Shown in pieces: positions 14,536 through 64,000 of a DNA stretch of 64,000 nucleotides; positions within the stretch are counted from its first letter, which is position 1; each line of letters begins with the position of its first letter. The notes below the pieces were generated by a model that worked only from the letters and a program-made list of their open reading frames with translations, had not been told where the DNA came from and did not search any database. This DNA is from Vitrella brassicaformis CCMP3155 (lineage: Eukaryota > Protista > Chromerida). Location: NCBI GenBank assembly GCA_001179505.1, contig CDMY01000791.1, positions 201,880-265,879 of the forward strand, in the 5' to 3' direction. Position numbers and translations under genes: made by a program.

Positions 14536-15114
14536 GATGGCACAGACACGAGATAATCATGGCCGGACATGCAGGTAGGAGTGAGATGCATGGGTGTCTC
14601 CTCAGGGCTACGCCTGTCTATATTTTGTATTAGGTCCACTCCTTCCTTAACTTACGCGCACCCCTCTCGCCGAGGTGTCGGCGAGAATGGGCGGGTTTGT
14701 AAGTATGATGGGCCACCGGAAAATGACTGAGGAGACACGATGACGCTCACTGCCTTGCTTCCCGCTTCTTTTATGCAGGCAATCGCTGACTACATTTTAT
14801 ATCAGTAGAGATGTACTTCCGGGGTACGCGCTACCATGTCTGCCAAGCGGTAAACGCAGGCCACGAATGCCCTGATCTGGGATGGTACCAGACGTGCTTC
14901 TCAGACGCGGACAAGACCATGACGGCACCCAGGCGCCTTCGGTGATAAAGACTGGATAGCCCTTTTTATCGAGTACCCTTCCTTCGTGGCGCCGCGCCAG
15001 ATCATGCCAGCCAACGAGCAGCCCTTCCCCATCAGCCGTACCCTCACACCCCATATTCGACAAAACACCGATGCCGTGAAGCGCTCATCGTCGGAAGATA
15101 GAACAAACACCACG

Positions 15115-15972: not shown

Positions 15973-16018
<46 letters not shown>

Positions 16019-17400
16019 CTGCGTGTGTGCAGGTGGTGTGTCGGAGGACTTTGAGCAAGGAGAGAGCAAAGGCCAGCAACAGCTTCAGGAGGTCAGTGTG
16101 TGAATGCACTGCCAGACATGGCTCCCGGGATTCATTGCTCTCACTCCCCTTGTCCGTCTGTCTGTCTGTCTGTCTGTCAGGGTGTCGGCCCGCTGGGTGT
16201 CGGCAGTCTGACGAGTGAGGCGCTGTGCGAGGCGACGTCATCAGGCTTCTTCCTCACCAAGATGAGCTCACTGCCGCCCGGCGGGATCGACAAGGGGCCG
16301 GCGGAGATGACAGAGGGCAACCACCACAACACGATCATCGCACCCCGTGCTCTCGACCAAAGCGCCAGCCACAGCAGAGGCCGCTCGTCATCCCTTCCGC
16401 CTCGAGTGGTGCCCCCGTCGCTGCATGATGATGCCTCACCATCTTGCCAGCGCAGCTCCGGCGGACAGGTGAAGCACGGTCAAGCAGCCCCTTGGTGGCA
16501 GCATGCAGTGTCCATATCTTTCTCCCCCGGTCTAACAGGTTCGCATAGGGGATTTCGAGTTTCTGCACCAGCTGCTTGTGCAGGTGTGGCGATGGATGGG
16601 AGGCAACACCGTGCATGAGTGTTGTTCATTCCCTCTCTTGTGTGTTCCGTGCCTTCAGAACCACGCGGTAGCTTGTATGGACGCCTCTCAGCTGCCCAAC
16701 CAGGTCAGTCGGCGTCCCGTCCCCACAGCCACGGTGGTCGTCCACAGGTCAGGCTGCGGTGCATGTGTGTTGTATGTGTGCTGGTGCAGAGTCCCATGAC
16801 GCTGAGGACCACGCGTCGGTGAAAAGAGCCCTGCAGGCAGCGAGGGACGCCCTGTGGACGGGCTTCGGGAGCCTTCAGAACATCAGATACCAGGCAGGCA
16901 CCTTGGCACGCACAACGACACACACTGCTATACATTGTATCCCTGCGGCACGTCTGTGGTGTGGCATGTGTGGTGTGTGCAGCATGACCCACAGCTCGAG
17001 GGCAACGAGTTCCACCTGCACGAGAGGGGCAGCATGTCAACTTGCAACGAGGGACCGGTAGGTAACCACCAACGCACAGAGAGGAGCGTATCTGCACTGT
17101 CGCGCCGCACTCCGTACCTATCTGTATGTCGATGGATCACCAGGCTCAATTCCGCGTGTCATCGCTCGAGCTCGCCCACGTCATGAGCTTGTTGCCTCCG
17201 TGGGACCTCGGCCGCCGTCTCCTCAGCAAGGACCTCTCCTCGCAGTCACTCCCCCGCTGCGGACGCTATGTCATCGACTGCAGTGACCCGGCAATGCGGT
17301 CTACGTGGGAGCGCATGCCGTCGGACGTGGCCCGCAAGCTGGGGCGGCGGCTGGTCAATCTCACATGTGGGTGCGCCTCGTTGAGGGTCACATGAAGGGC
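15115..17400 (+). pseudogene. Lineage-specific multi-exon gene (family A: coiled-coil leader, F-box-like segment, 'WERMP' domain), frameshifted and truncated
   Basis: Exons MEA|...SSATRVPGSATSAANQQ|AVSDSRFHRMREQLDLMRDIADTLQTQ|CVDLST...LESSQ, then ...QNIRYQ|HDPQLEGNEFHLHERG and TWERMPSDVARKLGRRLVNL. Paralogous pieces at 17.6, 28.7, 52 and 60.5 kb. Confidence 0.55.
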
Positions 17401-28399: not shown

Positions 28400-28699
28400 N
28401 NNNNNNNNNNNNNNNNNNNNNNNNNNNNNNNNNNNNNNNNNNNNNNNNNNNNNNNNNNNNNNNNNNNNNNNNNNNNNNNNNNNNNNNNNNNNNNNNNNNN
28501 NNNNNNNNNNNNNNNNNNNNNNNNNNNNNNNNNNNNNNNNNNNNNNNNNNNNNNNNNNNNNNNNNNNNNNNNNNNNNNNNNNNNNNNNNNNNNNNNNNNN
28601 NNNNNNNNNNNNNNNNNNNNNNNNNNNNNNNNNNNNNNNNNNNNNNNNNNNNNNNNNNNNNNNNNNNNNNNNNNNNNNNNNNNNNNNNNNNNNNNNNNN
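28400..28699. other. Assembly gap (300 N)
   Basis: Run of N. Confidence 1.
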
Positions 28700-29096
28700 C
28701 GTCAGATGTGTCGCTTGCCTCTCCTTCTACGCCACTCGCCTCGCCAGCACCGACCTGAGGGCACACCACACCACACGAAGCCATGCAAGTGCACCCACAT
28801 CCCGCACATATGTCGACGTCCGCACCTGTGAGCTGTCGATGATTCGCCTCATGTCGTCGACTTGCGACTCGATGCGCATCAGCCCCTCAGACAGCCGACC
28901 AGAAAGGGCGTCTCGGGTCGCCGACAGATCGACGCACTGACACATAAGAAGCCAATACATGAGGCACGTGCTTACGGAAGCGACCGGGCGCATACCTGTG
29001 TCTGCAGTGTGTCGGCGAGGTCACGCATGAGATCCAGCCCCGCCCGCATGCGATGGAGTAAGTCACGATCACTGACGGCCTGCACGACATGAGCGC

Positions 29097-29128
<32 letters not shown>

Positions 29129-29349
29129 CACACACGTGTTGGTGCGACAAGATGAGCCCGGTGCTGAGTGCCCACCTGATTGTTCGCGGCATGAGTGGCA
29201 CTGCCGGGCAGACGAGTCGCAGATGACCCACTGCCAGCACCACCACCGTCACGCTCACCTGCCACACAGACGGACAAGACAGCCATGGCTGATGAATGCC
29301 CGCCTGCTTCCCTCCGCTTGTGTGAGTGCACTTCACCTGCCGCTTCCAT
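28700..29349 (-). pseudogene. Family A 5' module, inverted copy
   Basis: Reverse complement is near-identical to 60536-61175 (MEAA|GERDGGGAGSGSSATRLPG...|AVSDRDLLHRMRAGLDLMRDLADTLQTQ|CVDLSATRD...). Confidence 0.7.
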
Positions 29350-31029
29350 CGTTAGGCCCCGGTTGTCCTGTCCTACTCTCCGCCGATGCCAATCGCTTCC
29401 ATGGTCACACGAGCAGCGATGTGGGTGCCGCTGTCGTCGTCTTCTATCGTCCGCCGCTGACCACCTCTCTCACCATACGCAGCATGGAAAGCAGGATCAT
29501 CCTCCAACGATTCGGACTCGGTCTTCGTCCTTCCCGTTTCGCCTGCCGCTAAGAAAACGTCACGGAAGGCATCTCACTCGCCTCAGAGAGAGCGCTTTTT
29601 TTGCGAGCTTTTGAAAAGTTGCATGCATTTCGAGCTGACATGGCATCGCGGAGGGTCGTTGTGCAGTCAAAGGATGGCCGTCTTCACGCACGCAATGAGC
29701 GAGGTCGGCTCAAGTACAAGAGAAAAAAGCACCGATGATTGACTGATGCATGCTGTTTCTGCTTCAGATGATGGAAGTGATCCCATTTCACTGCCTCAGA
29801 TCACAAGGGCAGTGCTGCGGCCACTGCTGCCAAGATCAACAAACTGCTTCACAACAGCTGCCAAGATGGCGAACAGCACTGGGTGCTGTTGATCAGTGAA
29901 GCGCCATCTTCATCAAGTCGCTGGACGTGCTCTCTTTAAGAACGCTGTACTTTCAGCTGAGGTACTGACACGACACCCATCTACCATTCCGCTCAGGTGC
30001 GACACATGGCGAATTTCCCCTGTCCAGGTGTTCTTGTGAGATCCAAGTGCTCCGCAGTGCCCCTGCACCCCCTCACGGCAAATGGCCATTGCCGGCGGTG
30101 TGATGAAGTTCCTTTCTTTGCAACTGGTTGCCAACGACGGGTCCCACCGACTCTACTTTGATGTCGGAATTCACGCCGCACATTCAGACACCCGGACATC
30201 CACCTCTCTGTCTCCCTCTTTGCTTGTGTGTCTGTAGGGTCGATCTCTTGAGCGGCAGCTGGACCTTCTCGGCGTCAGTGTCTGCATCGGCGGACAGACC
30301 CCCACAACCGGCCACTAGGTACCTCCACGCGCACGAAACTGCACACACATGCACCCCATCGCTTTCTGTGGTGACTTGGCGCCCCTCCCCAGTGTTGTTG
30401 TCGATGCTGCCCGGCCGCATAGTCTCCCTCTGTGCCAACACGACCACCAGCAGGCAGGCAGCAGCACAGGGCGAGGAGGGGATGGACGGCCGCAGTGTGT
30501 GCACCGTGTGTCGCTGCTATCGATGAGTTTGGCTTTGTCGTTTTCTTTTTCTGCAGCGTGTTGGGCCTCCGTCGCGCACCCTGCGGCGCGCGAAGAGACA
30601 GTCGCGGGGTGGCGGGGCCCCGTCTTGCGCACAACGGCACGCCCGTTGTATTCCCTTGCTTGTCGAGATTGGCTGCTGGTTGTGCGGATGGCTGACCGGA
30701 CGACTGGCTGTCTGTTTGTCGTGCCTGGCTGTTGTTGGCTTCTTTTTGGCTGGGCCATTCGCTCGACGACTGTTTGACAATGAGGGCTGGAGAGGGAGGG
30801 AGGGAGGGAGGGAGGGCCTTCTTACACAGCCGATCGCTGTCCGCATTTATATCTGACTGATTTGGTCCTTTGAGAAGATGTCACGCTGCCTGGCGAGTGA
30901 TTCTGGCTTAGTGATTGTGGACATCGAGAGTATCGCTAAGCGTCTTTTGTTCATGGGATTCGCATCAAATGGATCGTTACGCCGTTTGTCGCTTTGGAGT
31001 CTTCTCACATTCATGCACACGACTCAACA

Positions 31030-33780: not shown

Positions 33781-35210
33781 TATGTACACCGCACAACTGG
33801 ATGTGTGTGTGTGTCTTCCCGGCGCCTTTGCGGAGACGACAGCACAGCACAGCACCGCAGATGGACAGACAGACAAGGCAGACAGGCACCGGAAGGAACG
33901 TATCAGCCAGCCAGCGATAATACAACCAAAACAGCCTCGTGTGTGTGAGGGGCAGCTTCATCAGTGTGTCCCTGGTGGGTATGAGCGACGGCAGTTTACA
34001 AAGCAGAGAGAGTGCGGCAGGGCAAAACAATTCAGCAACTCGGCAGGAAGGTCAACGTACCCACACAGAATGAAAGCAATGGGTCATAAATCGACAGCAT
34101 TGTCTGGTGGGTGGCAGGCAATGCAGTCCGCGCGCTCAGTCAGCCGCCACCAATTGACCCTCCAACACACAACACCACACACCACGAGATGCAAAGATAC
34201 CTGGCTGACGCGGGCGAGAAGTACAGATGAGATGAGTGAGTGACTGAGTGAGTATTGGCAGCCGGCCATGTGTGTCGACACAGCCGCCCACAGGTAATTC
34301 ACCAAGTGGCGGACGGGATGGGCAGGCAGCTCCCCGCCCACCACATCGATGCAGTCAGTCAGCGTACACACGAGGGCACATAATACATAGAGAGGTACGA
34401 ATGCAGGCCAGGCCAGGAGAGGGCCATTGTGTGTGTGGATGCGATCGATGGCTTAAACCACACGTGGACCTCTCTCCCTCCGCCACTTCCACACGACCCA
34501 GACGAACAGCACACACATCGATGTATATGTGTGTGGCTGGCGGCTGCGAGAGAGAGAGAGAGTGAGTAGAAGTCCCTGGTGCACTGCAGGTGCCTCCCTC
34601 CCTCCCCCCTCCCCCCTCCCACGCCACTGGTGCCGTTGTCAGTCATTTCCCTCTGGCCTTTGCACGACGACAGGTGGGCAGACTGACTGACAGACACAGA
34701 CAGACAGGGAGGGCTGAGGGGGGGCGAGTAGCTGACAAATACACGCATCCATCCATCCATCCATCCATCAGTCAGTCAGTGTGGGTCCTTCACTGGTGCA
34801 CGTGAACATCGGATCGGTCGCCGAGGGCAAACACACTTAAACCATTGCTGGCAAAGCAGCATAGGGAGGGAGGGAGGGAAGCCATACATCCACAGGTCGT
34901 GTGAGTGACTGACTGAGTGAGTGAATGGCAAGTCGTCCTATCGACAGATGATTGGGGCCGCCGCCGTCGGCAGAAAGACGGCGACCCCTCAGCCCGACAC
35001 AAATAACACGACAGACAGCAAGGAAGCGGCAAGAACGGATCAAAACTTGGCTGCCTGGCGTCTGTCCAGGTCATGAGGCAGCTGGCCTGGACGACCTGTG
35101 TGTGTGTGGTGAGATGGATGAGCAACAAACAAATACATCCGGTGGGTGGGAGTATAGCAGAGTGTTCATACAGACAGACAGCCACACTGACACACACAGC
35201 TGGCGGCACA

Positions 35211-35510
35211 NNNNNNNNNNNNNNNNNNNNNNNNNNNNNNNNNNNNNNNNNNNNNNNNNNNNNNNNNNNNNNNNNNNNNNNNNNNNNNNNNNNNNNNNNN
35301 NNNNNNNNNNNNNNNNNNNNNNNNNNNNNNNNNNNNNNNNNNNNNNNNNNNNNNNNNNNNNNNNNNNNNNNNNNNNNNNNNNNNNNNNNNNNNNNNNNNN
35401 NNNNNNNNNNNNNNNNNNNNNNNNNNNNNNNNNNNNNNNNNNNNNNNNNNNNNNNNNNNNNNNNNNNNNNNNNNNNNNNNNNNNNNNNNNNNNNNNNNNN
35501 NNNNNNNNNN
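35211..35510. other. Assembly gap (300 N)
   Basis: Run of N. Confidence 1.
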
Positions 35511-36743
35511 TCCCTGGTGCACTGCAGGTGCCTCCCTCCCTCCCCCCTCCCCCCTCCCACGCCACTGGTGCCGTTGTCAGTCATTTCCCTCTGGCCTTTG
35601 CACGACGACAGGTGGGCAGACTGACTGACAGACACAGACAGACAGGGAGGGCTGAGGGGGGGCGAGTAGCTGACAAATACACGCATCCATCCATCCATCC
35701 ATCCATCAGTCAGTCAGTGTGGGTCCTTCACTGGTGCACGTGAACATCGGATCGGTCGCCGAGGGCAAACACACTTAAACCATTGCTGGCAAAGCAGCAT
35801 AGGGAGGGAGGGAGGGAAGCCATACATCCACAGGTCGTGTGAGTGACTGACTGAGTGAGTGAATGGCAAGTCGTCCTATCGACAGATGATTGGGGCCGCC
35901 GCCGTCGGCAGAAAGACGGCGACCCCTCAGCCCGACACAAATAACACGACAGACAGCAAGGAAGCGGCAAGAACGGATCAAAACTTGGCTGCCTGGCGTC
36001 TGTCCAGGTCATGAGGCAGCTGGCCTGGACGACCTGTGTGTGTGTGGTGAGATGGATGAGCAACAAACAAATACATCCGGTGGGTGGGAGTATAGCAGAG
36101 TGTTCATACAGACAGACAGCCACACTGACACACACAGCTGGCGGCACAAACAGGGGTATCTGTCTGTCTGTCTGTCTGTGTCGGCACATTCGGCCGCCCC
36201 GTCGCCCTTTGTTGTGGGGGCCCGCCAGTGCGTGAGTGCTCAGGCAGACAGGCAACGAAGGCTGTGGTGCGTACACACCCAGACAGACAGACAGACAGAC
36301 AGGTTTGTATGCATGTCCGTGAAGCGCATCCACACACTTGTACAGACAGACGGCTGGTGCCACTTCGCCTGTGGGTCGGGGGCACGTGCACTCGCTGGCT
36401 GCCTCGGCGGGGGATGTGTGTATGCTCAGAGGTACATGAGATGTTGGAAAACGGGACAGAGGCCGTCCGATCGATCGATTGACATGATGGGATCTCTCTC
36501 TCTCGCTCGCTTCACTCTGTCCTCGAGACCCCCCACAACAGCCAGCCACACCAGCCAGCCAGCCAGCCACACCAGCCAGCCAGCCTCCCATCGGTTGTGT
36601 ATGAATCGACCAGCCTGTCAGCAACGGCACTGTACTGCCGGCACGACCGACCAGTATCGGTGCGCATCTGTGGACCAGCCAATACGATCCACATCCATCC
36701 ATCCAGCCATCCATTCATCCATCGGCCACAGCAACAAGGCACA

Positions 36744-37043
36744 NNNNNNNNNNNNNNNNNNNNNNNNNNNNNNNNNNNNNNNNNNNNNNNNNNNNNNNNN
36801 NNNNNNNNNNNNNNNNNNNNNNNNNNNNNNNNNNNNNNNNNNNNNNNNNNNNNNNNNNNNNNNNNNNNNNNNNNNNNNNNNNNNNNNNNNNNNNNNNNNN
36901 NNNNNNNNNNNNNNNNNNNNNNNNNNNNNNNNNNNNNNNNNNNNNNNNNNNNNNNNNNNNNNNNNNNNNNNNNNNNNNNNNNNNNNNNNNNNNNNNNNNN
37001 NNNNNNNNNNNNNNNNNNNNNNNNNNNNNNNNNNNNNNNNNNN
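36744..37043. other. Assembly gap (300 N)
   Basis: Run of N. Confidence 1.
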
Positions 37044-38514: not shown

Positions 38515-40485
38515 TCAGTGGTCGGATGGCTGGCAGTGAGTGGTTCCATCCCTCAGTCCGTTCGTACCGTCCTGGAGGGTCTGCTGGATGGCGAGCTTGT
38601 CCTCATCGACGCCCCCCGGGGCCGCCTCAACTGAAGGGCAGAAAGCGAAGCGCACATAGAGCGGGGAGACAGACAACCAGACGGATCCACACGTGTGGGT
38701 GGGTGTGGGTGTGGGGTCTGTCGGTGCAATGCGGTTCCTCTTACGCGCGAGCTGGCTGTCACGGCTCTCGCAGGCGCGACCATGTGCTTTCCTCCGCAGC
38801 TCTTCTACCAGCTCGGCACGCGCTGCCTTGTCCACAGATCTCCCCCTCACAATCGACACGTGATACTGCTCCAGCAGGATCCGCACCAACTGCTCCTTGG
38901 CCACAAGCAGCTTGGAGGGGTCGCGATCCTCAGGCCTCAGCTGGAGCAGCACATCACACAGAACCCGCACAGCCTGCCGGAGGGCCGGCGAACAGCTGGC
39001 TGCATCGTTGTGGATGGTGGTCTTCAGTTTGTTGAGGCGCCCCCGGAGGAAGCCCAGCACTGTGCCTCGTGGTCCGCCTTCTTGTTCTGCCGCTCCCACA
39101 GTCCGTCATCAAAGGACTTCTTGATCTTGAAGGACTTTGCCATCCTGCCAAGCAAACCATCGCTGCCCCCACCCCCCGTGGCCGCACTCGACGCAGCACC
39201 CGACGCACCTGCTGCCCTCTTTGCTGAGTTCCGCGACCTCTTGTCGTCTTTTTTGGTCTGCGGCACGGCTTTCTTCTTGGACAGGGCCTTGATATCGAGA
39301 ATCACCTTGTCGCTCCACGGGTGGGCGTCCCTGTTGTAGTTGCGGCGCTTCCGAACGAGCAGGACAGCAAGGGCAGGGGCCAGGGAGTAGACATCGCTGG
39401 CGCCGCAGTAGCCCCTGAAGCCCCACTGGGTCAGCAGTGAGTTCATGGTCTCCTGATGCCGCAGGCAAAGCTCCTCATCCTCCCAGCTCTGATCCACCGC
39501 CTTCCGCATCAGGAAGGCCTCTGGCGCCATCGAATTGCGTTTGCCGAAGCCCTCATTATTGTCCCATCGCTTCCACTCGATGGTCTTGCTGCCGGGCTGG
39601 TCCAGGATCTCGTCCTCGGGCTCCCACCCTGCGTACCCTTCCAGCTCAATCACCACCAAGCTCAGCACAGGCAAGGAGATCTGTGTGGCCGCCGGGGCGG
39701 ATGACGCTCCTCCCGCGGCGAGTGCCCGCTGCTCCGACTCAGCAGCAGGGGCATCAGCAGCAGTAGGCTCCTCGTTGGTCCCAGCTGCCTCGCTGCGGGG
39801 CGACGGCTCGGTGACGACTGACTTGGAGGGGGCCGTAGTGCCTTGCTGGGCGGCTCGGGGGTCGACAGAGGGCGCCTCGATGCCTTCCTCCTCTGCGGCC
39901 TCTGACGGGCCGGGCAATGGTGGCGACTCCTTGGTGGCCGCGGGCCCCTCTCTCTCGGGCAACGCCGCCTCAGCAACCACCCCCCCCTCCCCGCCAGCCG
40001 CGGGCTCGTCTCGCCCACTGCTGCCGCCACCACGTGCCCCATGCCGCACACCTCCCTCGAGCGTCAGAGGGGCGGCCTGGTGTCCATCGCCCCTCTCAGC
40101 CACGCCGTCGGTGCCGGCGGTGGTGCGCCCAGACCTGACGCCAGCGATGTGGCCGACGTGCAGCTGTGGTCCATGTTGGCCAACAGCCGGTGATGCTGCT
40201 GCTGTTGCGAGTGAAGGGGGGCTGGGGAGGATGCCATGTCAATGGATGAGGGCGGGGCGTCACGCGAAATCGGCTGCCAGCATAAGCAACAAAGGAAATG
40301 TTTTTGAGTGGATGGATGAATGGGCATAGCAGCTCACCTTTGGCAGTGCGGTGGGCGGCATGGGCTGGCTCTCCTTCACCTCGCTGCCCATCGCCATGTC
40401 ACTGGACGACTCGCCTGAAGCAAACAAACAACGCATAGACATCTTGGCATACATCATCATCTCTCCCATACCAGGTTGTGGGTCC
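38515..40485 (-). pseudogene. Degenerate kinase-like gene (K3), C-terminal half, frameshifted; 5' part lost in gap
   Basis: ISLPVLSLVVIELEGYAG...RNSMAPEAFL...WGFRGYCGASDVYSLAPALAVLL, then a frame change near 39075-39105 to ...VLLQLRPEDRDPSKLL. 39940-40485 is the reverse complement of 63475-64000. Confidence 0.65.
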
Positions 40486-40785
40486 NNNNNNNNNNNNNNN
40501 NNNNNNNNNNNNNNNNNNNNNNNNNNNNNNNNNNNNNNNNNNNNNNNNNNNNNNNNNNNNNNNNNNNNNNNNNNNNNNNNNNNNNNNNNNNNNNNNNNNN
40601 NNNNNNNNNNNNNNNNNNNNNNNNNNNNNNNNNNNNNNNNNNNNNNNNNNNNNNNNNNNNNNNNNNNNNNNNNNNNNNNNNNNNNNNNNNNNNNNNNNNN
40701 NNNNNNNNNNNNNNNNNNNNNNNNNNNNNNNNNNNNNNNNNNNNNNNNNNNNNNNNNNNNNNNNNNNNNNNNNNNNNNNNNNNNN
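40486..40785. other. Assembly gap (300 N)
   Basis: Run of N. Confidence 1.
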
Positions 40786-54411: not shown

Positions 54412-55364
54412 CAGGTCAGGCAAACAGTCCAAATCGCTTTCAACCGTGTGACGTGTGTTGATCTCTTCCTGTGCATGCGTCATAGGCCTATCGAAGCACA
54501 TGGACGTCCACACACAGCGATGAGGAGGTCTGGTCTTGTGGGTCTGCCGTCTGCTCGTGCTCTCTGGCTGGATGGCTTACTTACTAAATAGCCAACTAGG
54601 TGTCCATGTGTGCGTCGGTGTCATTCGTTGTTGGATGGGCATGCCTCTGGCCGGTCCTTTGCTGACATGTCGGCTGTGTTCCCTCACTATCGTGTCGTCG
54701 GTCACGTCAGATGACACGCAGGACGGGACGCATCGGCCGACGGCCAGACAGGCCACCAGCAAGGGACCGATCGCAGGCAGACGCATGTATTGAGGTGACT
54801 AGACAGAGAGACCAGTCTACATGCGATCCTTGCTTATGTACATACATGCATACATACATACACACATACATACATACACGTACGTATACATATATGTCTG
54901 TCTGCCCGTCTGCCTGCCTGCCTGCCTGTTTGTGTCGTCTCCGCAAGGGCCGCGGACAGAGAGGGTAGCCGACGTCGGTTTTCCTTCTGGGCATCCCAGA
55001 CCCGCAACGTGTATGTCTTCCCTCCTGCTGCCTCTCCGACGACAGAACGACATGTCCACACGTTATTTAAGTCATCCACCGATGGCCATCCATCCCTCCC
55101 TCCCTCGCCCCCCTCTGTGCAGCCAGCAGCTCTAACATCCTCTTTTCCCTTGTTTCCTTTCCTTTATCGTGGGTAGGTGGATGGATGGATGGATGCGTGT
55201 GGTGGTGCGGCCTCTTGTTTTTCGCCGTGTCGTCGATGTGATGTGTGCAGATGAGTGGTGGGGCGTGTATGGCGTTCGTGCTTGTCCTTGCATACAAACC
55301 AACGGATATTCTTCCCATGAGACCGTGTCGCACTGTGGATGGACGTGTGTATGCAGCCTGCTCT

Positions 55365-56229: not shown

Positions 56230-59200
56230 CTTCCATACAAAGTGAAGGCACGCCAAGCCCCGACTGCTCTCTGATGAACTCCCGGACCTGACCGAACGTG
56301 TAATTCGCCATCGTCTTGCCACTTGATGAGCTCAGGATTGGCCAGCACTTCGGCAAGCTCGCCACCCTCCTTGACGTAGACCGGCCCCCGGACGGTCCTC
56401 TCCTCATCAACAGCGGCCGACGCGACGATCCCAGTGTTCTGGTTGAATGCAACGACGCCCAGCTCTTCACTGGTCCACTCGGGCGTCAGCTGCGGCGCGT
56501 CTTCTTCTGTGGGGAACTCCAGACCCGCGAAGGAAGGGCTGGCCAACGAATCCCCATCATGTCGTCCGTCACGCCGAGAAAGGCTCCGAGGGCCGCCATG
56601 GGGCTGTCTCCCCCGGATGGGTTGAGAGGGGGAAGATTCTGAGCGTCGATGAGGCCGATAAGGGAGGTTTCCTCCTCTGATATGAGCTCGAAGAAAGCCG
56701 CCGGGTCCTCGGGGGGAGGGATCGGGAGCTCTCCTGGTGTCCCGGTCGGGATGGCAAGTCGCCAAAAATCTGGCGGGCCAGGCGGCTCTTTCGCCCCCTC
56801 CTCTGGCAGCAGGCCCAGGGGGTCCTTGGGGAGGCCCTTCGAGTCTTCCTTGGATGGCGGCCCTGTGGGGAAGAGATCTGGTAGCTCTGGTGCCTCCTTG
56901 GCTGGCTCTTTTTCGGGGATGACGACGGCTTGCCAGCCAGCCGGTGGCCTTGCGCTTTCGCCGCGCCCTAGCCGCCGCCTCCTTGCCTGTCTCGCTGATT
57001 GTTGTGGAAGCAGGGAAGGCTGGTTGCTCTGCGGCAGCTTGTTGAGGACATCCGGGCTTGTTGACCGAAGGGCTGGGATGGAGGGGCAGGTAATAAGCCT
57101 GGTGTGGAGAAGGTACGGGACAACGCCGTTCCACCGACAAAGCTTGGGCAGCCTGGAACATAGGACGCCGCACGATACGCCGCACTGACAGACAGTTAGG
57201 GGCACAAGTGTCATTGCTTGTAAGGCGATCGATGGGCTGGTAGGTTTCTCCCTCTTTACTGCCTCGTACCAGTTTGACGTCGATTGCGGCTGTCAGTAGG
57301 CATCCATCCTTGATGAGCTCGACGGGCGCGCATTTGTCATTCTTGGCTTGGTACTCAAGCGGCGCCTCCTCGCAGTGTGACCGCCCTGCGTCCGTGTGGT
57401 CCACCTCCATCCAATCGTTGCACTTTGGCCTTATCTTGACCTGCAATGCTTCGACTTGCAGCAGGCGCCTGCGTCTCCCTGCGTCTCCCTTAACAGGGGG
57501 CTGGTTGTCCATATTATAGTCACCGAGGCACCGAACACCGATGCTCATCCGACGGATTCCACATCATCGGTTGTTTGGATCTTGAGTGCATCGTCGAGCC
57601 CCCCGTTGATCTGCGCCAGGAATGGGTAGTCTTCGATCGGATGGGCCCCCGGCTGCTCCATGATAGTTTCAGAGAACTGATTCAGCAGCAGACCGGCACC
57701 GGTCATGGCCCGCCTGGCCCTCGTCGGAGCCGAAGGCTTCTGCCACCGGCCCTCTCCGTCTCCGGCCTCGCCATTGGCCGCCTGGACAGTGACCTCCCAT
57801 GTCGCCAGAATTTGGTGCAAGCCACGGGAGTCACGGTCTGCTGGCAGACGGACTTGCAGGCGGCTGCTGTGTTGAAGGCCGTCGGTCTGTCGATGACAGG
57901 GCCGCCGTCCAGTACAGTGTTGCCCGCAAAGCATTTCACACAACCTGACACGCATAACCAGACGCACCGCAGACGATGTCAACGATGCCGGCCGATGAAG
58001 TTGTCTGCTTGCTCACCTTGTGGTGCGGCTCCATTCGCGGCGACGAGTGCGCTGACCAATGCTGCAGTCGGATCCTTCTGCTGTCCCACTTGCTGCCCTG
58101 TCCGGCACTAATGGCGCCTGCCATTTGCCCCGCCAGCTGTGCACCGGCGCCAATGATGAGAACACCCTGCAAGTGGCGTCTTCTTACGTCTCTGGCCGAC
58201 TCTTTGTGCCGCTGAAAGTTGAACCAGGACTGTGCGTAGTCGTTGAAGAGAGGCATCGCGGGATCCTGCCCTGGCGTGAAGATGCGGCGGTTGCCGCTGA
58301 GGAGGGAGGCGAGAAGCATGTCGGGCGCTGCCATGTCGCGAGGCTGGTGCTTGTGTAGGTGGTCTGTTGGCCGGATGAATCCAGAGTGAGCAGACTGTCA
58401 GGAACCCACTGCAAGTTCCGCGTGATGGAGGGCATGTTCGTGTAGTCTGTCGGCTTCCCAGTCGCCGCATCGATGGTGCACACACAGAGGAGGGCCGCAC
58501 CATGTCATCCTTGAGGCTGACTGGTGTCTTGGAGCCTTGCAGGGTGGGCAGTGCGGTCGACTGGAGCTGCGGCTGAATGCCTTCGTTCCCGCACGGGATG
58601 AAGAATACGTGGCCGAAATGCGATGCCCTCTGCATGGCCGTCTTGAGGATGTGGGGTCGTCTTTGGCCTGCTGTGTGTGACGAGGGAAAGTCGCCGAATT
58701 CGAGGGCGAGGTACACCACAGATGTCCTCTGCTGAACAGAGTATTCGATGGGCGCCAGCACATCAGCAATCAGCAAGGTCGAATCCAAGGGCGATGTGGT
58801 CGTGTCCTTGGTGTCGACCTCGCTGTCACAGTTGCCGGCATAGAGCACTCCCGCCGGTGTGTCGTGGGTACCCACGCTGCTGGCGAGCGCCTTTGTTTCG
58901 CTATAGCCACTTCCGCCCTTCTGTAGAGGCCTTGTGACTTCGTACGCGAGGAAGTCGTCCACGAATCCGTTGTCGTCATCGTCGTGCTGGGGGCGGGGGG
59001 AAGACGGGTGGAGACGGGGGGGAGGGGGGAAGCAGAGGGAAAGGGAAGGGGAAGCAGTGGACGACTGGCAGAGCGGCAGGTTGCAGTGCACACGTTCCTC
59101 GAGAGAAACGAATGCTTCAAGCAAACGCTCCTTGAAAGAAGCGAATGCGGCAAACGTTCCTTCGAAGAAACGAATGCTCAATGCAAACGGCCCTTTAAAG

Positions 59201-59386
59201 AGCCGAATGCCTGAAAGCCGCTCAGGGGGCGAGAGCCTCCGGGGGGATGGGATCCACCTCCGGAGTCAACTCGAAGTAGTAGACCAGCTGCCAGTCGCCA
59301 CTCAACGCTCCCAGTTTCCCCAGGCCCGGGTCGTCGATCTGGTATCTCCATCCCGACTCCTTGTCCCGGGTGAAACGATACTCCCA
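56230..59386 (-). pseudogene. Subtilisin-like (S8) protease pseudogene with downstream PAN/apple-like domain, Cys-containing segment and Pro-rich tail
   Basis: Motifs in S8 order: IDDPGLGKLGAL...W (59386-59258), HDDDDNGFVDDF (from 58986), GTHDTPAGVLYAG, ILKTAMQRASHFGHVFFIPCGNEG, LLCVCTIDAATGKPTDYTN, YTSTSLAT/..AAPDMLLASLL. Then GCVKCFAGNTVLDGG...AAACKSVCQQ..ACTKFW (PAN-like). At least 6 single-base frameshifts. Confidence 0.75.
59088..59210 (-). repeat. Array of four 28-bp imperfect palindromes (units 59088-59115, 59121-59148, 59150-59177, 59183-59210)
   Basis: Consensus GCAAACGNYCCTYNRRAGARNCGAATGC, linkers of 5, 1 and 5 nt; compensatory changes at three stem positions. Confidence 0.9.
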
Positions 59387-59489
59387 CTGCAGACAACCAC
59401 CCATCCATCCAGGCACACGCAAAAGAAGATAAGGCGAGAAGTATACATCCATCTGTCTGTCTGTCTGTCTAGCTCAGTATCAGCCTTTG

Positions 59490-60140
59490 TCAGTACCGCC
59501 GTCACCCTCTTCTCGTCGCCGTCGTGCAGCACGCAAACTTCCCGTCGCGGTGGACGGTGGGTCCAGGGTGCCGCGGAGCCGCCGTGGGGGATGCCGTCAG
59601 AAATCTGGCAGACATGCGCAGAACAGGTTGAATCCGATGGGCTCTTCATCTATCTCATGGATGCCTCCCCGCCGGGCCCGCTTTGCTGCGTGTGCTTACG
59701 TCTCTCTTTGGCTGCTCGCACCACATCCACCCCTTGTCGGCCCCGACGAAGCCCTCCGGCACCGGCGCGCAGGTGCCGACCGGCACGAGCTCCTCCTCCC
59801 GCTCCCACCGCCGCCGCTTGTCCTCCTTGCCCGTCCCCCGTCCCCACCTCGCCTTTCGCCTGACACGCACAACACAACACGACACAACCCGACACAACCC
59901 GGTCTCTCCCTGTGCCCCAAGCGTCTCTCTTGCTTTCCTCACTGAGTGCGGAAGAGCTGTCTTGTCATGGGTTCGTCGAACTGCGTGGCCCAGAGGCCGT
60001 GGTCGCTCGCCGTGTTGCCCATTCTCCTGTCTGCCGTCTCCCCTTGGGGGCTGGTCCCCAGAGCGAAGCTCGCCGCGGACAGCATGACTGTTGTGACGGC
60101 TCTCGCTGCCTCACATCCTCCCCTCGAGGAATGGGAAAGA
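59490..60140 (-). pseudogene. Upstream exons of unknown identity, possibly the subtilase prodomain
   Basis: Coding-like exons (LWATQFDEPMTRQLFRT; WEREEELVPVGTCAPVPEGFVGADKGWMWCEQPKRD) on the same strand directly 5' of the subtilase exons; frame continuity not established. Confidence 0.3.
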
Positions 60141-60535
60141 TAAGGCAACGGATGCTTTGATCTCCCCTTCACGGTCATTTACTGTGCCAGATCTGCCCAC
60201 CTGCAATGAGTCATTGTGTGGCCCTGACTGATGGTGCGACGCTTGATGCTCCTTCCGCCACACACATGGCGACAAGAAGGGTGCACTGGCCGACTCAAAT
60301 TGACTCCTGAGGTCGACTCCTTGAGGCGGGAGCTAGAAGCAGCTTCGAATCGCACTTCTGAGCTCGCATTCTACGGCTCCGTTGATCTGTTTTTCTGTGA
60401 GCCTTCCGCGACGTCGGCTCAGCGGCAGGCGAGGCGGGGAGGGAAAAGGAGCGACTGAATTCCGTCGGATGATGTTCGTGACCATGGAAGCGATTAGCAT
60501 CGGCGGAGAGTAGGACAGGACAACGGGGCCTAACG

Positions 60536-61900
60536 ATGGAAGCGGCAGGTGAAGTGCACTCACACAAGCGGAGGGAAGCAGGCGGGCATTCATCAGCATG
60601 ACTGTCTTGTCCGTCTGTGTGGCAGGTGAACGTGATGGTGGTGGGGCTGGCAGTGGGTCCTCTGCGACTCGTCTGCCCGGCAGTGCCACTCATGCCGCGA
60701 ACCATCAGGTGGGCACTCAGCACCGGGCTCATCTTGTCGCACCAACACGTGTGTGTGTGTGTGTGTGTGTGTGGCGCTCATGTCGTGCAGGCCGTCAGTG
60801 ATCGTGACTTACTCCATCGCATGCGGGCGGGGCTGGATCTCATGCGTGACCTCGCCGACACACTGCAGACACAGGTATGCGCCCGGTCGCTTCCGTGAGC
60901 ACGTGCCTCATGTATTGGCTTCTTATGTGTCAGTGCGTCGATCTGTCGGCGACCCGAGACGCCCTTTCTGGTCGGCTGTCTGAGGGGCTGATGCGCATCG
61001 AGTCGCAAGTCGACGACATGAGGCGATCATCGACAGCTCACAGGTGCGCACGTCGACATATGTGCGGGATGTGGGTGCACTTGCATGGCTTCGTGTGGTG
61101 TGGTGTGGTGTGCCCTCAGGTCGGTGTTGACGAGGCGAGTGGCGTAGAAGGAGAGGCAAGCGACACATCTGACGCACCTCACTCGGTAGGTTCTCGAAGA
61201 GGAGAGAGAGCATCAGTGGCGGCGGGCAATCTGATGCACATGTGTGTGTGCAGGCCCATGCTGCTGTGAGGGCGGATGGCTCCTCGGTGCCCTCTTCCCT
61301 TGCCGCTGCTGCTAGTGCTGTGTCTGCTGCTGGTGGCCGGGGTATGAGACGACAGAGGGATGACACGGCGACCCATAAGATGCACCAAGAGCTGTCTGTG
61401 TGTGTGTGCAGGTGGTGTGTCGGGGGACCTTGGGCAAGGAGGAGAGAGCAAAGGCCAGCAACAGCTTCAGGAGGTCAGTGTGTGAATGCACTGACAGACA
61501 TGGCTCCCGGGATTCATTGCTCTCACTCCCCTTGTCCGTCTGTCTGTCTGTCTGTCTGTCAGGGTGTCGGCAGTCTGACGAGTGAGCCGCTGTGCGAGTG
61601 GACGACGTCATGCCCCTCCTTCACCACTAAGATGACCTCAGTGCGGCCTCGCGAGGTCGAGAAGGGGCCGGCGGAGATGACAGAGGACAACCACCACAAC
61701 AAGATCATCGCGCCACGTGCTCTCAACAAGAGCGGCAGCCACAGCAGAGGCCGGTCGTCCTTCGTGTCGCCTCGAGTGGTGTCCCGGTCGCCGCATGATG
61801 ACACATCACCCTCTGGCCAGCACACGTCTGATGGACAGGTGAGGCAAACCCAACCCAACAGCAGCCCCTTGCTGGCGCCATGCAGTCCATATCTTTCTGT
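60536..61900 (+). pseudogene. Family A 5' module (truncated)
   Basis: Collinear with 15115-16500 and, inverted, with 28700-29349. Confidence 0.65.
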
Positions 61901-62208
61901 CCGGTCCATCAGGTTTCCGTGGGCATGTCCCCCGTCTGCAGAGGCCGCTCGTCATCCCTTCCGCCTCCTGTGCTGCCCCGGTCGCCAGCGCCGTCATCGG
62001 CGGCGGCGTCCCACCAGGACACCCCCGGTGCACACGTAAGGAGCAGAGCACAGGAGCCACCCGTCGATGCCATCACTGACAGTGTGATGGATGTTGATGG
62101 CCTTGTGTATGTTGTCATCAGGAGCTTTCGTCAACTTTCCTGGTCGAGAAGGGGATTGGGAAGAAGCCCAAATCTAAGGTCAAGGCGTATAAATCGCGGT
62201 GTCTGGAG

Positions 62209-64000
62209 ATGTGGGACAGCTTCTATGGGTCCTCCTCGATCCACGGTCACGATGGCGAGACGCACTACGAGGAGTCTTCGTCCCACGACAAGCTCTTCGA
62301 GCAGGGGGGCTCACCCATCCCTCCTGTAATCATCGCTGAATGTGTTGATGGGTTCGCCGTGCTCGAGCATGGCATGGTGCTGAAGGACCCCCGAGGTCTT
62401 CTGCCTCCTTCTTTCGGCGTGGCTGAGAGGGGCGATGGACACCAGGCTGCCGCCCTGACGCTCGAGGGAGGTGTGCGGCATGGGGCACGTGGTGGCGGCA
62501 GCAGTGGGCGAGACGAGCCCGCGGCTGGCGGGGAGGGGGGAGTGGTTGCTGAGGCGGCGTTGCCCAAGAGAGAGGGGCCCGCGGCCACCAAGGAGTCGCC
62601 ACCATTGCCCGGCCCGTCAGAGGCCGCAGAGGAGGAAGGCATCGAGGCGCCCTCTGTCGACCCCCGCGCCGCCCAGCAAGGCACTACGGCCCCCTCCAAG
62701 TCAGTCGTCACCGAGCCGTCGCCCCGCAGCGAGGCAGCTGGGACCAACGAGGAACCTACTGCTGCGCATGCCCCTGCTGCCTCCCCTGACGACTCCAAGT
62801 GGGAGGTCGTGTCGGCCGAGGTGCGCACAGACAGCCAAACAGCTGCGGGCGGGGGGCAGACACACACAGCTAGCTGCTGATCAGAGAGACGCTCTCCATT
62901 GATGTTCGGTGTGCCTGTGTCTCCTGTCTCTTAACGCAGAAGCCCCCAGCCGCAGCTCCGAGGGCGCCAAGCCTGGGAGAGGACAAAGGACTGGCCGAAG
63001 CCATGGACATGCTCGAGAGCGCCATCACCCACGACCAAGAAAAGTCCCTCAGCCGCAGTGGCCACTCCAAGGAGCAGCTGATGGACATTGCTGTGCTGGT
63101 GTCTACGATCGATGGACTCGAGAAGGCCCATCAGATCCTCACGGCCAACATCCCCCGATTCGACTTCGTCAAGCATGCCCGCCCAGCCAGAACCCCTGAC
63201 CAGAGGCCGTGCGTCGATGTCAGCCTTATCAAGATGGGAGACGGATGGTGCAAGCTCACCAACGGCGTCCATGAGCGGGTGGATTCCGGCCCGCTGCGCC
63301 TGATGGACTTGAATGCGCCGAATATCCTCCTCTCCCTCACACTAGCGGAGCTCCGCATCGAGCCCGCGGCGCCCTCGGCCACGGCACCATCAGCCACGTC
63401 TGCGGCATCACCAGCGGTCCAGCACTCGGCCGTGGGCAGCCAGGCACCGCAGCCGCCACCGCAAACGGACCCACAACCTGGTATGGGAGAGATGATGATG
63501 TATGCCAAGATGTCTATGCGTTGTTTGTTTGCTTCAGGCGAGTCGTCCAGTGACATGGCGATGGGCAGCGAGGTGAAGGAGAGCCAGCCCATGCCGCCCA
63601 CCGCACTGCCAAAGGTGAGCTGCTATGCCCATTCATCCATCCACTCAAAAACATTTCCTTTGTTGCTTATGCTGGCAGCCGATTTCGCGTGACGCCCCCG
63701 CCCTCATCGATTGACATGGCATCCTCCCCAGCCCCCCTTCACTCGCAACAGCAGCAGCATCACCGGCTGTTGGCCAACATGGACCACAGCTGCACGTCGG
63801 CCACATCGCTGGCGTCAGGTCTGGGCGCACCACCGCCGGCACCGACGGCGTGGCTGAGAGGGGCGATGGACACCAGGCTGCCGCCCTGACGCTCGAGGAA
63901 GGTGTGCGGCATGGGGCACGTGGTGGCGGCAGCAGTGGGCGAGACGAGCCCGCGGCTGGCGGGGAGGGGGGAGTGGTTGCTGAGGCGGCGTTGCCCGAGA
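62209..64000 (+). pseudogene. Degenerate kinase-like gene (K5), runs off right edge, in-frame TGA at 63712
   Basis: Exon 62209-62820, then intron, then ...EQLMDIAVLVSTIDGLEKAHQILTANIP...GPLRLMDLNAPNILL (catalytic-loop-like, HRD replaced). Introns at ~63482-63537 and ~63615-63678; next exon hits TGA at 63712-63714. Confidence 0.6.

What the first reader, a model, noticed from the sequence alone, without database searches (positions are those of the whole stretch)
59088..59210. Four tandem 28-nt hairpins with compensatory base changes, strand-specific (minus-strand RNA or ssDNA element)
Seen: the four units are GCACACGTTCCTCGAGAGAAACGAATGC, GCAAACGCTCCTTGAAAGAAGCGAATGC, GCAAACGTTCCTTCGAAGAAACGAATGC and GCAAACGGCCCTTTAAAGAGCCGAATGC. 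Pairing position i with 29-i: pair 8/21 is T-A, C-G, T-A, G-C; pair 9/20 is T-A, T-A, T-A, C-G; pair 13/16 is C-G, T-A, T-A, T-A. Every substitution at these pairs keeps the pairing, while the loop varies. The invariant C10/A19 mismatch becomes a G-U wobble on the minus strand, and the A/A mismatches become tandem U-U. Minus is also the sense strand of the surrounding gene. Spacing (33, 29, 33) breaks frame, so this is not a coding repeat. The array lies in a predicted intron of the subtilase gene (59257-58987) or, alternatively, starts 12 nt after a TGA (3' UTR). Inference: a selected multivalent RNA structure (protein-binding or processing element), or a REP/BIME-like hairpin substrate for an HUH-type nuclease. 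I recognise no named family for it.
Basis: partly seen in the sequence, partly recalled or inferred. Interest (0 to 1): 0.8.

Follow-up and report, generated by a model that had tools for sequence, protein, structure and literature searches.

The report
Four-hairpin tandem repeat in probable intron
Four tandem copies of a 28-base near-palindrome in a non-coding gap of an orphan gene of the alga Vitrella brassicaformis would fold into four small RNA hairpins whose pairing has been kept through mutation, but it is a single local repeat with no detectable relatives and no demonstrated function.

Summary
Four 28-nt units lie at 59088-59210, spaced 33/29/33 nt. All 44 cells over 11 symmetric positions stay paired on the minus strand, and three of those positions changed on both sides. 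Random substitution would keep all the stems intact with P of about 5e-5. As minus-strand RNA each unit folds at -10.5 to -14.9 kcal/mol. The plus strand folds weakly and DNA folds marginally. The array is the strongest GC-adjusted structure outlier among 1550 windows on the minus strand.

The window is the end of Vitrella brassicaformis contig CDMY01000791.1. The "subtilase" label is not supported: Pfam, PDB and phmmer against 1.84 billion proteins gave nothing. The annotation puts the array 11 nt after a stop codon. Codon-position GC periodicity, a downstream coding stretch with no start codon, and in-frame GT..AG sites with a local-type branch and acceptor motif instead favour an unannotated 193-nt (or 271-nt) intron.

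No other copy exists in the 64 kb, in Rfam, or in the viral, metagenome or prokaryote collections.

My best reading is a self-folding intronic minisatellite. A neutral repeat maintained by template switching, or a protein-binding RNA platform, remain open. REP/HUH is unsupported. Interest is modest.

The parts
59183..59210 (-). Hairpin unit 4 (first in the transcript): GCAUUCGGCUCU-UUAA-AGGGCCGUUUGC
   Evidence: Folds alone as RNA at -14.9 kcal/mol, z = -5.1. CM score 44.8 bits.
59150..59177 (-). Hairpin unit 3: GCAUUCGUUUCU-UCGA-AGGAACGUUUGC
   Evidence: -10.5 kcal/mol, z = -3.3. 44.1 bits.
59121..59148 (-). Hairpin unit 2: GCAUUCGCUUCU-UUCA-AGGAGCGUUUGC
   Evidence: -12.9 kcal/mol, z = -4.8. 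46.0 bits.
59088..59115 (-). Hairpin unit 1 (last in the transcript): GCAUUCGUUUCU-CUCG-AGGAACGUGUGC. Its extra U-G pair replaces one of the U-U mismatches.
   Evidence: -11.2 kcal/mol, z = -3.0. 41.7 bits.
59217..59223 (-). 5' arm (GAGCGGC) of a 7-bp helix that closes the whole array. It overlaps the annotated stop codon.
   Evidence: Paired with 59071-59077 in the minimum-energy and centroid folds of the 161-nt and 216-nt stretches.
59071..59077 (-). 3' arm (GCCGCUC) of the closing helix
59065..59257 (-). Candidate unannotated intron of 193 nt: GUGGAU...[47 nt][array, 123 nt][23 nt]...CUCUGCCAG. The alternative acceptor at 58987 gives 271 nt.
   Evidence: GT and AG are in phase with frame 2 upstream and frame 0 downstream, with no stop codon in the joined product. 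Codon-position GC periodicity is absent between about 59220 and 59010. The 3' end resembles those of neighbouring annotated introns. No RNA evidence is available.
59080..59087 (-). Putative branch-site region ACUGCAAC, immediately 3' of the last hairpin and about 15 nt upstream of the AG at 59066-59065
   Evidence: The same CAACCUG...UCUGCCAG arrangement occurs in intron 2 of the annotated gene, and a CUAAC...UGUCAG arrangement in the intron of the 313-aa model. It stays unpaired in the predicted fold. This is an inference.
59222..59224 (-). TGA that ends the annotated 191-aa protein P0001. It lies 33 nt inside the candidate intron.
   Evidence: P0001 was mapped onto the window.
59258..59386 (-). 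Upstream coding exon (last exon of annotated P0001, up to the candidate donor): WEYRF...YYFELTPE
   Evidence: Exact match to P0001. Over the whole annotated last exon, 59225-59386, GC at codon positions 1/2/3 is 0.63/0.44/0.81.
58468..58986 (-). Unannotated coding-like stretch (HDDDDNGFVDD...CGNEG...), frame 0, with no in-frame ATG before about 58590
   Evidence: GC at codon positions 1/2/3 is 0.59/0.46/0.72, with continuous frame-0 periodicity. No homologue was found anywhere.
58988..59064 (-). C/U-rich tract. It is either the tail of the 271-nt intron or a Ser/Pro-rich coding linker if the acceptor is at 59065.
   Evidence: Sequence. The G-rich low-complexity repeat on the plus strand was reported by TRF and the repeat finder.

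Best explanation
The array is a local minisatellite: four tandem copies of one asymmetric 28-nt near-palindrome. The copies share one orientation, and the spacer pattern 5/1/5 nt suggests a duplicated 62-nt dimer. It sits in the only non-coding gap between two coding stretches of a minus-strand orphan gene of Vitrella brassicaformis.

That gap is most likely an unannotated spliceosomal intron running from 59257 to 59065 (193 nt), or to 58987 (271 nt). The published gene model reads into this gap and stops at a TGA 33 nt in.

In the pre-mRNA each unit would fold on itself. The predicted hairpin has 3 bp, a 2x2 U-U internal loop, 7 bp including a U-G wobble, and a 4-nt loop. The 123-nt insert then becomes four compact stem-loops placed between the 5' splice site and the branch site.

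I infer that pairing has been preserved because folding keeps the insert harmless. Without the array the intron would be 70 nt, against 83-110 nt for the neighbouring introns, so folded hairpins would keep the effective distance from 5' splice site to branch point near the local norm. Folding would also bury the AG and GU dinucleotides inside the repeat.

Shown here: the repeat, its fold, the covariation, the strand asymmetry, and the coding-periodicity and splice-site geometry. Inferred: transcription, splicing, and the reason the fold is kept.
For: Repeat and covariation:
- The repeat is unique in the window.
- All 44 cells pair on the minus strand, three positions changed on both sides, and the slid controls collapse.
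- All stems remain intact by chance with P = 4.5e-5 (or 3e-4 conditional). Loops vary faster than stems, P = 0.006.

Fold:
- Minus-strand RNA hairpins fold at -10.5 to -14.9 kcal/mol. The plus strand and DNA fold weakly.
- The region has z = -7.3 on minus against -2.0 on plus.
- It ranks 1 of 1550 GC-adjusted windows on the minus strand.

Intron reading:
- GC3 periodicity runs in frame 2 down to about 59225, is absent from about 59220 to 59010, and resumes in frame 0.
- The downstream coding-like stretch has no start codon before about 58590, so it needs an upstream exon.
- In-phase GT (59257) and AG (59065 or 58987) give a stop-free junction.
- The acceptor context GCAACCTGCCGCTCTGCCAG matches TCAACCTG...GTCTGCCAG of the neighbouring intron, and CTAAC...TGTCTGTCAG of another.
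- The four neighbouring annotated introns are 83-110 nt. Genome-wide, 16.41 Mb of intron is spread over 22,817 genes with a median of 6 introns each (PMC4501334).
- The branch-like motif stays single-stranded in the predicted fold.

Precedent: stems that shorten the 5' splice site to branch point distance are documented in yeast introns (PMC2536676, PMC12350175; titles and abstract openings seen).
Against: - No RNA data were available. The published Augustus model, which used RNA-seq intron hints (PMC4501334), does not contain this intron and ends at the TGA. The region may therefore be a 3' UTR, a retained intron or an untranscribed relic.
- The gene is an orphan with no homologue, so the coding call rests on composition alone.
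- There are only four units at one locus. Two stem pairs and one loop-closing position covary, which is too few for R-scape-type statistics.
- Palindromy runs through the loop centre in units 3 (TTCGAA) and 4 (TTTAAA) and at 13/16 in all four units. These positions cannot pair in an RNA hairpin, which hints at a DNA-level symmetric process.
- The compaction rationale is a geometric argument, not a test.
Confidence: 0.4

Rival explanations
1. Neutral minisatellite. The near-palindromic unit was duplicated by slippage, and its symmetry is kept by mutation bias rather than selection. Replication template switching within a quasi-palindrome copies one arm from the other and produces 'compensatory' changes in a single event. 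The repeat has no function, and the RNA fold is a by-product.
For: - Template switching is documented to create and repair hairpin stems with multi-base compensatory changes (PMC8794818; PMC5453318 and PMC3820800, listed).
- Symmetry extends through positions that cannot pair in an RNA hairpin: 13/16 in all units, and 14/15 in units 3 and 4.
- Unit 4 differs by an adjacent dinucleotide on both arms (TT to GC and AA to GC), as one templated event would give.
- The array is a single locus in a repeat-rich contig end, inside an orphan gene. There are no relatives in the 64 kb or in any collection scanned.
Against: - None of the six stem substitutions that differ from the consensus is left uncompensated (P = 3e-4), which would require switching to outpace point mutation.
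- The C/A mismatch next to the covarying pair 9/20, and the AA/AA mismatches, were never 'corrected' in any unit. Arm-to-arm copying should tend to correct them. They are tolerable only as U-G and U-U in minus-strand RNA.
- Loops and spacers are far more diverged than stems.
Confidence: 0.3
2. Multivalent regulatory RNA element. As annotated, the four stem-loops start 11 nt after the stop codon, in a 3' UTR or a regulated retained intron. They would serve as repeated binding sites for a structure-specific RNA-binding protein that controls stability, translation, 3'-end formation, or the choice between the truncated 191-aa product and a longer protein.
For: - The annotated model places the array directly after the TGA.
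- Besides the pairing, the non-paired U-U/U-U internal loop and the U-G wobble are kept in 15 of 16 and 4 of 4 cells, while the loops vary. That pattern suggests sequence-specific recognition of the lower stem.
- The fold is specific to the sense strand.
Against: - No second array exists in 64 kb even with a covariance model run with filters off. A trans-factor regulon would be expected to recur, although 64 kb is only 0.09% of the genome.
- No Rfam family reaches threshold. The best hit is LOOT at 23.9 bits against a 46.4-bit cut-off, and IRE and Histone3 are absent.
- Conservation of the unpaired bases may simply reflect common descent of four copies.
Confidence: 0.15
3. Single-stranded-DNA hairpins of a mobile or REP-like element, recognised by an HUH-type nuclease or transposase, or the end of a Helitron or MITE.
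For: The only support is the formal resemblance to clustered short imperfect palindromes. Position 13/16 covaries, and a 2-nt loop is sterically possible in DNA (my own knowledge, not tested here).
Against: - The DNA hairpins are marginal, at -3.1 to -6.4 kcal/mol with little strand difference.
- There is no other copy in the window.
- All units face the same direction.
- I saw no terminal inverted repeat or target-site duplication at the borders, and no CTRR-type 3' end next to a hairpin on inspection.
- No HUH or any other Pfam domain was found in the ORFs scanned.
- Vitrella carries only 1.5 Mb of transposable elements (PMC4501334).
- Exact-pattern scans of the viral, metagenome and prokaryote collections gave only two single hits, about the number expected by chance.
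Confidence: 0.03
4. The array is translated. This could happen as part of the long open minus frame 0 (59265 to 58111), reached by a +1 ribosomal frameshift at CCC-UGA-G with the hairpins as stimulator. It could also be a coding repeat.
For: Frame 0 is open through the whole array and runs in frame into the downstream coding-like stretch. A +1 shift at CCC UGA G (59227-59221) would join the two. The structure begins at the stop codon.
Against: - The 29-nt step puts units 1-2 and units 3-4 in different frames, so there is no peptide repeat.
- There is no codon-position GC periodicity over the array.
- Open frames of 200 codons or more are commonplace here, with 70 in 64 kb.
- A canonical in-phase GT..AG intron explains the same join more simply.
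Confidence: 0.03

Closest known systems
Intron-internal stems that shorten the 5' splice site to branch point distance ('zipper stems', e.g. yeast RPS17B/RP51B; PMC2536676, PMC12350175)
   Same: The predicted structure lies inside a probable spliceosomal intron, between the donor and a branch-like motif. Folding would bring the effective distance back to that of ordinary local introns.
   Different: The yeast cases use one long-range helix between two distant segments. Here there are four independent tandem mini-hairpins derived from a repeat. The organism is a chromerid. Neither splicing nor any dependence on structure has been shown.
Bacterial REP/BIME clusters with RAYT (HUH) transposases
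   Same: Both are short imperfect palindromes of 20-40 nt, clustered in transcribed non-coding DNA, with stems that vary in a compensatory way.
   Different: This is a eukaryotic nuclear locus and the only copy in 64 kb. All units are in direct orientation, whereas my recollection (not tested here) is that BIME units alternate. No HUH gene was found, and the DNA hairpins are weak.
Introner elements and hairpin-forming repeated introns of alveolates and algae (Amoebophrya, Micromonas, Aureococcus; PMC7789003)
   Same: Both are intron-borne sequences with predicted stem-loops in an alveolate lineage, and the insert accounts for most of the intron's length.
   Different: Introners are multi-copy families, with inverted repeats joining the two intron ends and direct repeats at the exon/intron borders. 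Here the palindromes are internal and tandem, there are no border repeats, the splice sites are canonical GT..AG, and no second copy was seen.
Quasi-palindromes maintained by template-switch mutation (PMC8794818, PMC5453318, PMC3820800)
   Same: Both show imperfect inverted repeats whose arms change together, including a two-base change on both arms.
   Different: Template switching should also erase neighbouring mismatches. Here the same three mismatches persist in all four copies.
Multi-hairpin untranslated-region elements such as the five iron-responsive elements of the transferrin-receptor 3' UTR (my own knowledge, not tested here beyond Rfam)
   Same: Both comprise several similar stem-loops in a row in a non-coding part of an mRNA.
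   Different: IREs are defined by a conserved apical loop and a bulged C. Here the loops differ in every unit and the lower stem is what is conserved. Rfam gives no IRE hit.

Membership tests
REP/BIME (bacterial repetitive extragenic palindromes) | Prokaryotic genome, located between genes of operons | tested here: not met
   The window is the end of contig CDMY01000791.1 of Vitrella brassicaformis CCMP3155, a eukaryote whose genes contain introns.
REP/BIME (bacterial repetitive extragenic palindromes) | Many dispersed copies per genome | tested here: inconclusive
   No other copy in the 64-kb window by pattern search or by covariance model with filters off. The window is only about 0.09% of the 72.7-Mb genome.
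REP/BIME (bacterial repetitive extragenic palindromes) | Cognate HUH (RAYT) transposase | tested here: not met
   No HUH or any other relevant Pfam domain in the local ORFs or in the ten long ORFs of the window that were scanned. The rest of the genome was not searched.
Introner elements / MITE-derived introns | Inverted repeats joining the two intron ends, and direct repeats (target-site duplications) at the exon/intron borders | tested here: not met
   The borders are GAG|GTGGAT and CTGCCAG|TCG (or CCCCAG|CAC), with no shared direct repeat. The only enclosing helix (59217-59223 with 59071-59077) is internal.
Introner elements / MITE-derived introns | Multi-copy family of near-identical introns | tested here: inconclusive
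   None in the 64 kb.
Any curated Rfam family (including IRE, Histone3, LOOT) | Covariance-model score at or above the family's gathering threshold | tested here: not met
   No hit at gathering thresholds over the whole window. The best sub-threshold hit is LOOT at 23.9 bits against 46.4 (E = 0.23). There is no IRE or Histone3 hit at E <= 1.
Structured intron with a distance-shortening stem (yeast 'zipper stem' type) | The structure lies in a spliceosomal intron between the 5' splice site and the branch point | tested here: inconclusive
   There are in-phase GT..AG sites, loss of coding periodicity across the gap, and a branch/acceptor motif like those of neighbouring introns directly 3' of the array. 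No transcript evidence is available, and the published model lacks this intron.
Structured intron with a distance-shortening stem (yeast 'zipper stem' type) | Efficient splicing depends on the pairing | not testable with these tools
   This needs minigene mutagenesis with disrupted and restored stems.
   Pfam gave 0 relevant hits, even for a concatenated 287-aa product at E <= 10. PDB gave 0 hits at E <= 10. phmmer against 1.84 billion representatives gave 0 hits. Motif-like strings (DDDDNGFVDD, GTH, CGNEG, STSLA) remain only a lead.
CRISPR array | Repeats separated by unique spacers of similar length (about 30 nt) | tested here: not met
   The spacers are 5, 1 and 5 nt, and the host is a eukaryote.

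The most novel reading that the evidence does not exclude
The array could be the first seen instance of a chromerid-specific class of multivalent stem-loop RNA elements. The defining features would be a conserved lower stem with a tandem U-U internal loop, a U-G wobble and a free loop sequence, read by a dedicated RNA-binding protein. At this locus it would decide whether the intron is removed, giving a long protein, or retained, giving the annotated 191-aa product that ends at the in-intron TGA.
Probability: 0.12. Interest if true: 0.6.

Novelty: new member of a known kind. Interest (0 to 1): 0.3.

Why it matters
If the fold is truly selected, this would be a compact natural example of compensatory evolution acting on the copies of a tandem repeat inside one intron. 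It would also hint that organisms with uniformly short introns tolerate intron expansion only when the insert folds out of the way. That idea could be tested genome-wide in Vitrella.

The analysis also flags a fragmented gene annotation at this locus. Three short models and one unannotated exon probably form one longer gene.

If the repeat is instead neutral, it is a clean small case of palindrome maintenance by template switching. In either case it is a single-locus curiosity in an orphan gene, not a new system.

Tried and rejected
- Subtilase identity. I ran Pfam on five ORF pieces and on a spliced 287-aa construct, PDB phmmer, a word-indexed search of 5.8 billion proteins (twice, with different exons), and a full phmmer against 1.84 billion representatives. 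Only the locus's own annotated orphan proteins P0001 and P0002 came back. No paralogous or orthologous locus therefore exists for comparing the array.
- Relatives of the unit. Exact-pattern scans of the metagenome, viral and prokaryote-genome collections gave two single, non-tandem hits, about the number expected for 20 fixed bases. Rfam gave nothing. Covariance model R1 found nothing in the window beyond the four units.
- Transposon context. Scanning ten long ORFs gave no Pfam domain of note. I saw no TIR or TSD.
- Long open frame through the array as evidence of coding. Rejected, because the window holds 70 open frames of 200 codons or more.
- Two perfect 10-nt inverted repeats sharing a 15-mer beside the array. 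Such helices occur at 0.43 per 250 nt in this window, so I recorded them only as noticed in passing.
- Resemblance of unit 4 to the histone 3' stem-loop. No Rfam support.
- Sampling more of the Vitrella genome through protein look-ups, and searching six-frame translations of the array. I considered both and did not run them. The first would add about 0.3% of the genome. The second has almost no power, because the conserved bases do not give any conserved 5-residue word.
Full report
**What is there.** Reading 58700-59600 shows four 28-nt units at 59088-59115, 59121-59148, 59150-59177 and 59183-59210 on the plus strand. Tandem Repeats Finder reports the array with periods of 33, 29 and 62 nt. 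The 62-nt period and the 5/1/5 spacer pattern suggest a duplicated dimer. The unit-to-unit distances (4-8 differences, my count from the alignment) are nearly star-like. A degenerate consensus with up to three mismatches finds only these four sites in 64 kb, against 0 expected. A covariance model built from the four units, run with filters off, finds nothing else. The next best hit scores 12 bits at E = 0.6.

**Is the hairpin pattern more than chance?** I aligned the units on the minus strand and scored 11 symmetric positions.
- All 44 cells form standard pairs.
- Three positions changed on both sides: 8/21 (UA, UA, CG, GC), 9/20 (UA x3, CG) and 13/16 (UA x3, CG).
- Position 10/19 is U-G in all four units.
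- Sliding the partners by 1-3 columns drops pairing to 37-56% and removes all double changes.

Position 13/16 would close a 2-nt loop, so the RNA stem proper has 10 pairs, of which two covary. If each unit receives its observed number of substitutions at random, all stems stay intact in 4.5e-5 of trials. Conditioning on the number that fall in stems gives 3e-4. Loop columns vary more than the rest (4/4 against 5/24, P = 0.006). The one unpaired substitution (plus-strand A4 to C in unit 1) turns a U-U mismatch into U-G on the minus strand.

**Strand and molecule.**
- As minus-strand RNA the units fold alone at -11.2, -12.9, -10.5 and -14.9 kcal/mol, with z between -3.0 and -5.1.
- As plus-strand RNA they fold at only -4.4 to -8.9 kcal/mol.
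- As DNA both strands are marginal, at -3.1 to -6.4 kcal/mol.
- The 161-nt region has z = -7.3 on minus and -2.0 on plus.
- Among 1550 overlapping 160-nt windows, the array is the top GC-adjusted outlier on the minus strand (z = -3.5) and is not in the top twelve on the plus strand.

The observation and the strand asymmetry are therefore confirmed.

**Where it is.** A protein search with the flanking reading frames returns one protein, an unnamed 191-aa product of Vitrella brassicaformis CCMP3155. Its contig is CDMY01000791.1 of GCA_001179505.1, and the window is the last 64 kb of that contig. The annotated gene occupies 59222-60085 on the minus strand. Its stop codon is at 59224-59222, so the array starts 11 nt after the annotated stop. 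The next annotated minus-strand models are a 108-aa gene (57936-58334) and a 313-aa gene (56486-57512).

**The subtilase claim.**
- Pfam finds nothing in five ORF pieces. For a spliced 287-aa construct at E <= 10 it gives only two weak, irrelevant matches.
- PDB sequences give no hit at E <= 10.
- A full phmmer scan of 1.84 billion representative proteins with the 173-aa "HDDDDNGFVDD...CGNEG" stretch gives zero hits.
- A second word-indexed search with the downstream exons returns only the locus's own 313-aa orphan.

As a consequence, there is no homologous locus anywhere against which the array could be compared.

**Intron or 3' UTR?** The published models were made by Augustus with RNA-seq intron hints (PMC4501334), and they end the gene at the TGA. 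Four observations in the sequence argue that the gene continues.
- Genes in this window have GC of about 0.8 at the third codon position and about 0.45 at the second. The last annotated exon shows this pattern (0.63/0.44/0.81). So does the unannotated stretch 58468-58986 in frame 0 (0.59/0.46/0.72).
- A sliding scan shows frame-2 periodicity down to about 59225, none from about 59220 to 59010, and frame 0 from there on. Further frame changes down to about 56300 look like one multi-exon gene spanning all three short models.
- The frame-0 stretch has no in-frame ATG before about 58590, so it needs an upstream exon.
- A GT at 59257 and AGs at 59065 or 58987 are in phase and give stop-free junctions.

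The acceptor at 59065 sits in the context GCAACCTGCCGCTCTGCCAG. That closely resembles TCAACCTG...GTCTGCCAG at the end of the gene's second annotated intron, and CTAAC...TGTCTGTCAG in the intron of the 313-aa model.

Either candidate intron contains the whole array. In the 193-nt version the layout is 47 nt, then the 123-nt array, then 23 nt. The branch-like ACUGCAAC lies directly after the last hairpin, and it stays unpaired in the predicted fold (-95.9 kcal/mol, z = -6.1). The four neighbouring annotated introns are 83-110 nt. Genome-wide figures imply a mean intron near 100 nt. Without the array, this intron would be 70 nt.

I therefore judge the intron reading more likely than the 3'-UTR reading, at roughly 60:40. 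No transcript evidence was available to me.

**What it most likely is and does.** The simplest account that fits is a local minisatellite of a self-complementary unit that expanded inside a short intron. Each copy folds on itself in the pre-mRNA, which keeps the donor-to-branch distance effectively normal. Stems that shorten this distance are documented in yeast introns (PMC2536676, PMC12350175). Copies that lose pairing would then be selected against. This explains three features: compensatory changes without loop conservation, tolerance of U-G and U-U only on the sense strand, and faster divergence of loops and spacers.

**The main rival.** The repeat may have no function at all. Replication template switching in quasi-palindromes can produce compensatory multi-base changes in one step (PMC8794818).
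- In its favour, the symmetry runs through the loop centre in units 3 (TTCGAA) and 4 (TTTAAA) and at 13/16, where RNA cannot pair. Unit 4 also changed an adjacent dinucleotide on both arms.
- Against it, not one stem change is left uncompensated, and the three fixed mismatches beside the covarying pairs were never corrected.

**Other readings.**
- A protein-binding multivalent element, in a 3' UTR or a regulated retained intron, is possible. The in-intron TGA yields exactly the annotated 191-aa product, so intron retention could toggle between two proteins. Nothing here tests that idea, and no second instance was found.
- The REP/HUH idea fails on orientation, copy number, DNA stability and the absence of a nuclease gene in the ORFs scanned.
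- Translation through a +1 frameshift at CCC-UGA-G is formally open, because frame 0 is open through the array and joins the downstream exon. However, the array has no coding periodicity, and open frames of 200 codons or more are abundant here.

**Comparison with known kinds.** No Rfam family reaches threshold. Pattern scans of the viral, metagenome and prokaryote collections give only two single hits, about the number expected by chance. The array is not an introner in the Amoebophrya or Micromonas sense, because it has no end-joining inverted repeat, no border direct repeats and no family. I file it as a new member of a known kind: a dyad-symmetric tandem repeat forming a structured intron insert.

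**Verdict.**
- The best explanation has confidence 0.4 and overall interest is 0.3.
- The most novel surviving reading is a chromerid-specific class of multivalent stem-loop elements, at probability about 0.12.
- The decisive tests are a whole-genome covariance-model search and the existing strand-specific RNA-seq. Neither could be run here.

Noticed in passing
window 56300-60085, minus strand: The annotation looks fragmented. There are three short unnamed gene models (191, 108 and 313 aa) and an unannotated stretch at 58468-58986 with clear codon-position GC periodicity and no start codon. Frame-switching periodicity runs through the whole interval, so this is probably one longer orphan gene.
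   Followed up: partly
window 59057-59071, with 58953-58962 and 59288-59297: The 15-mer GTGGACGACTGGCAG, just beside the array, is perfectly complementary over 10 nt each to a site in the downstream coding stretch and to one in the upstream exon. Such 10-nt inverted repeats occur at 0.43 per 250 nt in this window, so this may be chance. It could also be a trace of template switching or an exon-bridging helix.
   Followed up: partly
window 28400-28699, 35211-35510, 36744-37043, 40486-40785: Four 300-N assembly gaps are flanked by 97-100% identical copies (for example 34573-35210 equals 35511-36148). This looks like a tandem repeat of roughly 1 kb that was collapsed or scaffolded.
   Followed up: no
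window 39953-40485 vs 63467-64000; 28700-29408 vs 60478-61174; 15112-16541 vs 60533-61915: The contig end is rich in dispersed and inverted duplicated segments at 71-99% identity. One inverted copy reaches the very last base of the contig. None of the ten long ORFs scanned has a significant Pfam domain; one gave only weak sub-threshold coiled-coil-type matches.
   Followed up: partly
window 54641-54920: This is the second strongest predicted-structure outlier in the window. A (TACA)n microsatellite abuts its own inverted complement and forms a long AT-rich palindrome.
   Followed up: no
window 59183-59210, minus strand: The core of unit 4, GGCUCUUUAAAGGGCC, resembles the metazoan histone mRNA 3' stem-loop GGCUCUUUUCAGAGCC. 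The other units do not, and Rfam gives no Histone3 hit at E <= 1.
   Followed up: yes
window 59065-59699 and 57185-57269, minus strand: Local intron 3' ends share a (C/T)AAC motif 13-24 nt upstream of the AG, followed by TGTCTG(C)CAG. This may be a usable branch and acceptor signature for re-annotating Vitrella genes.
   Followed up: partly
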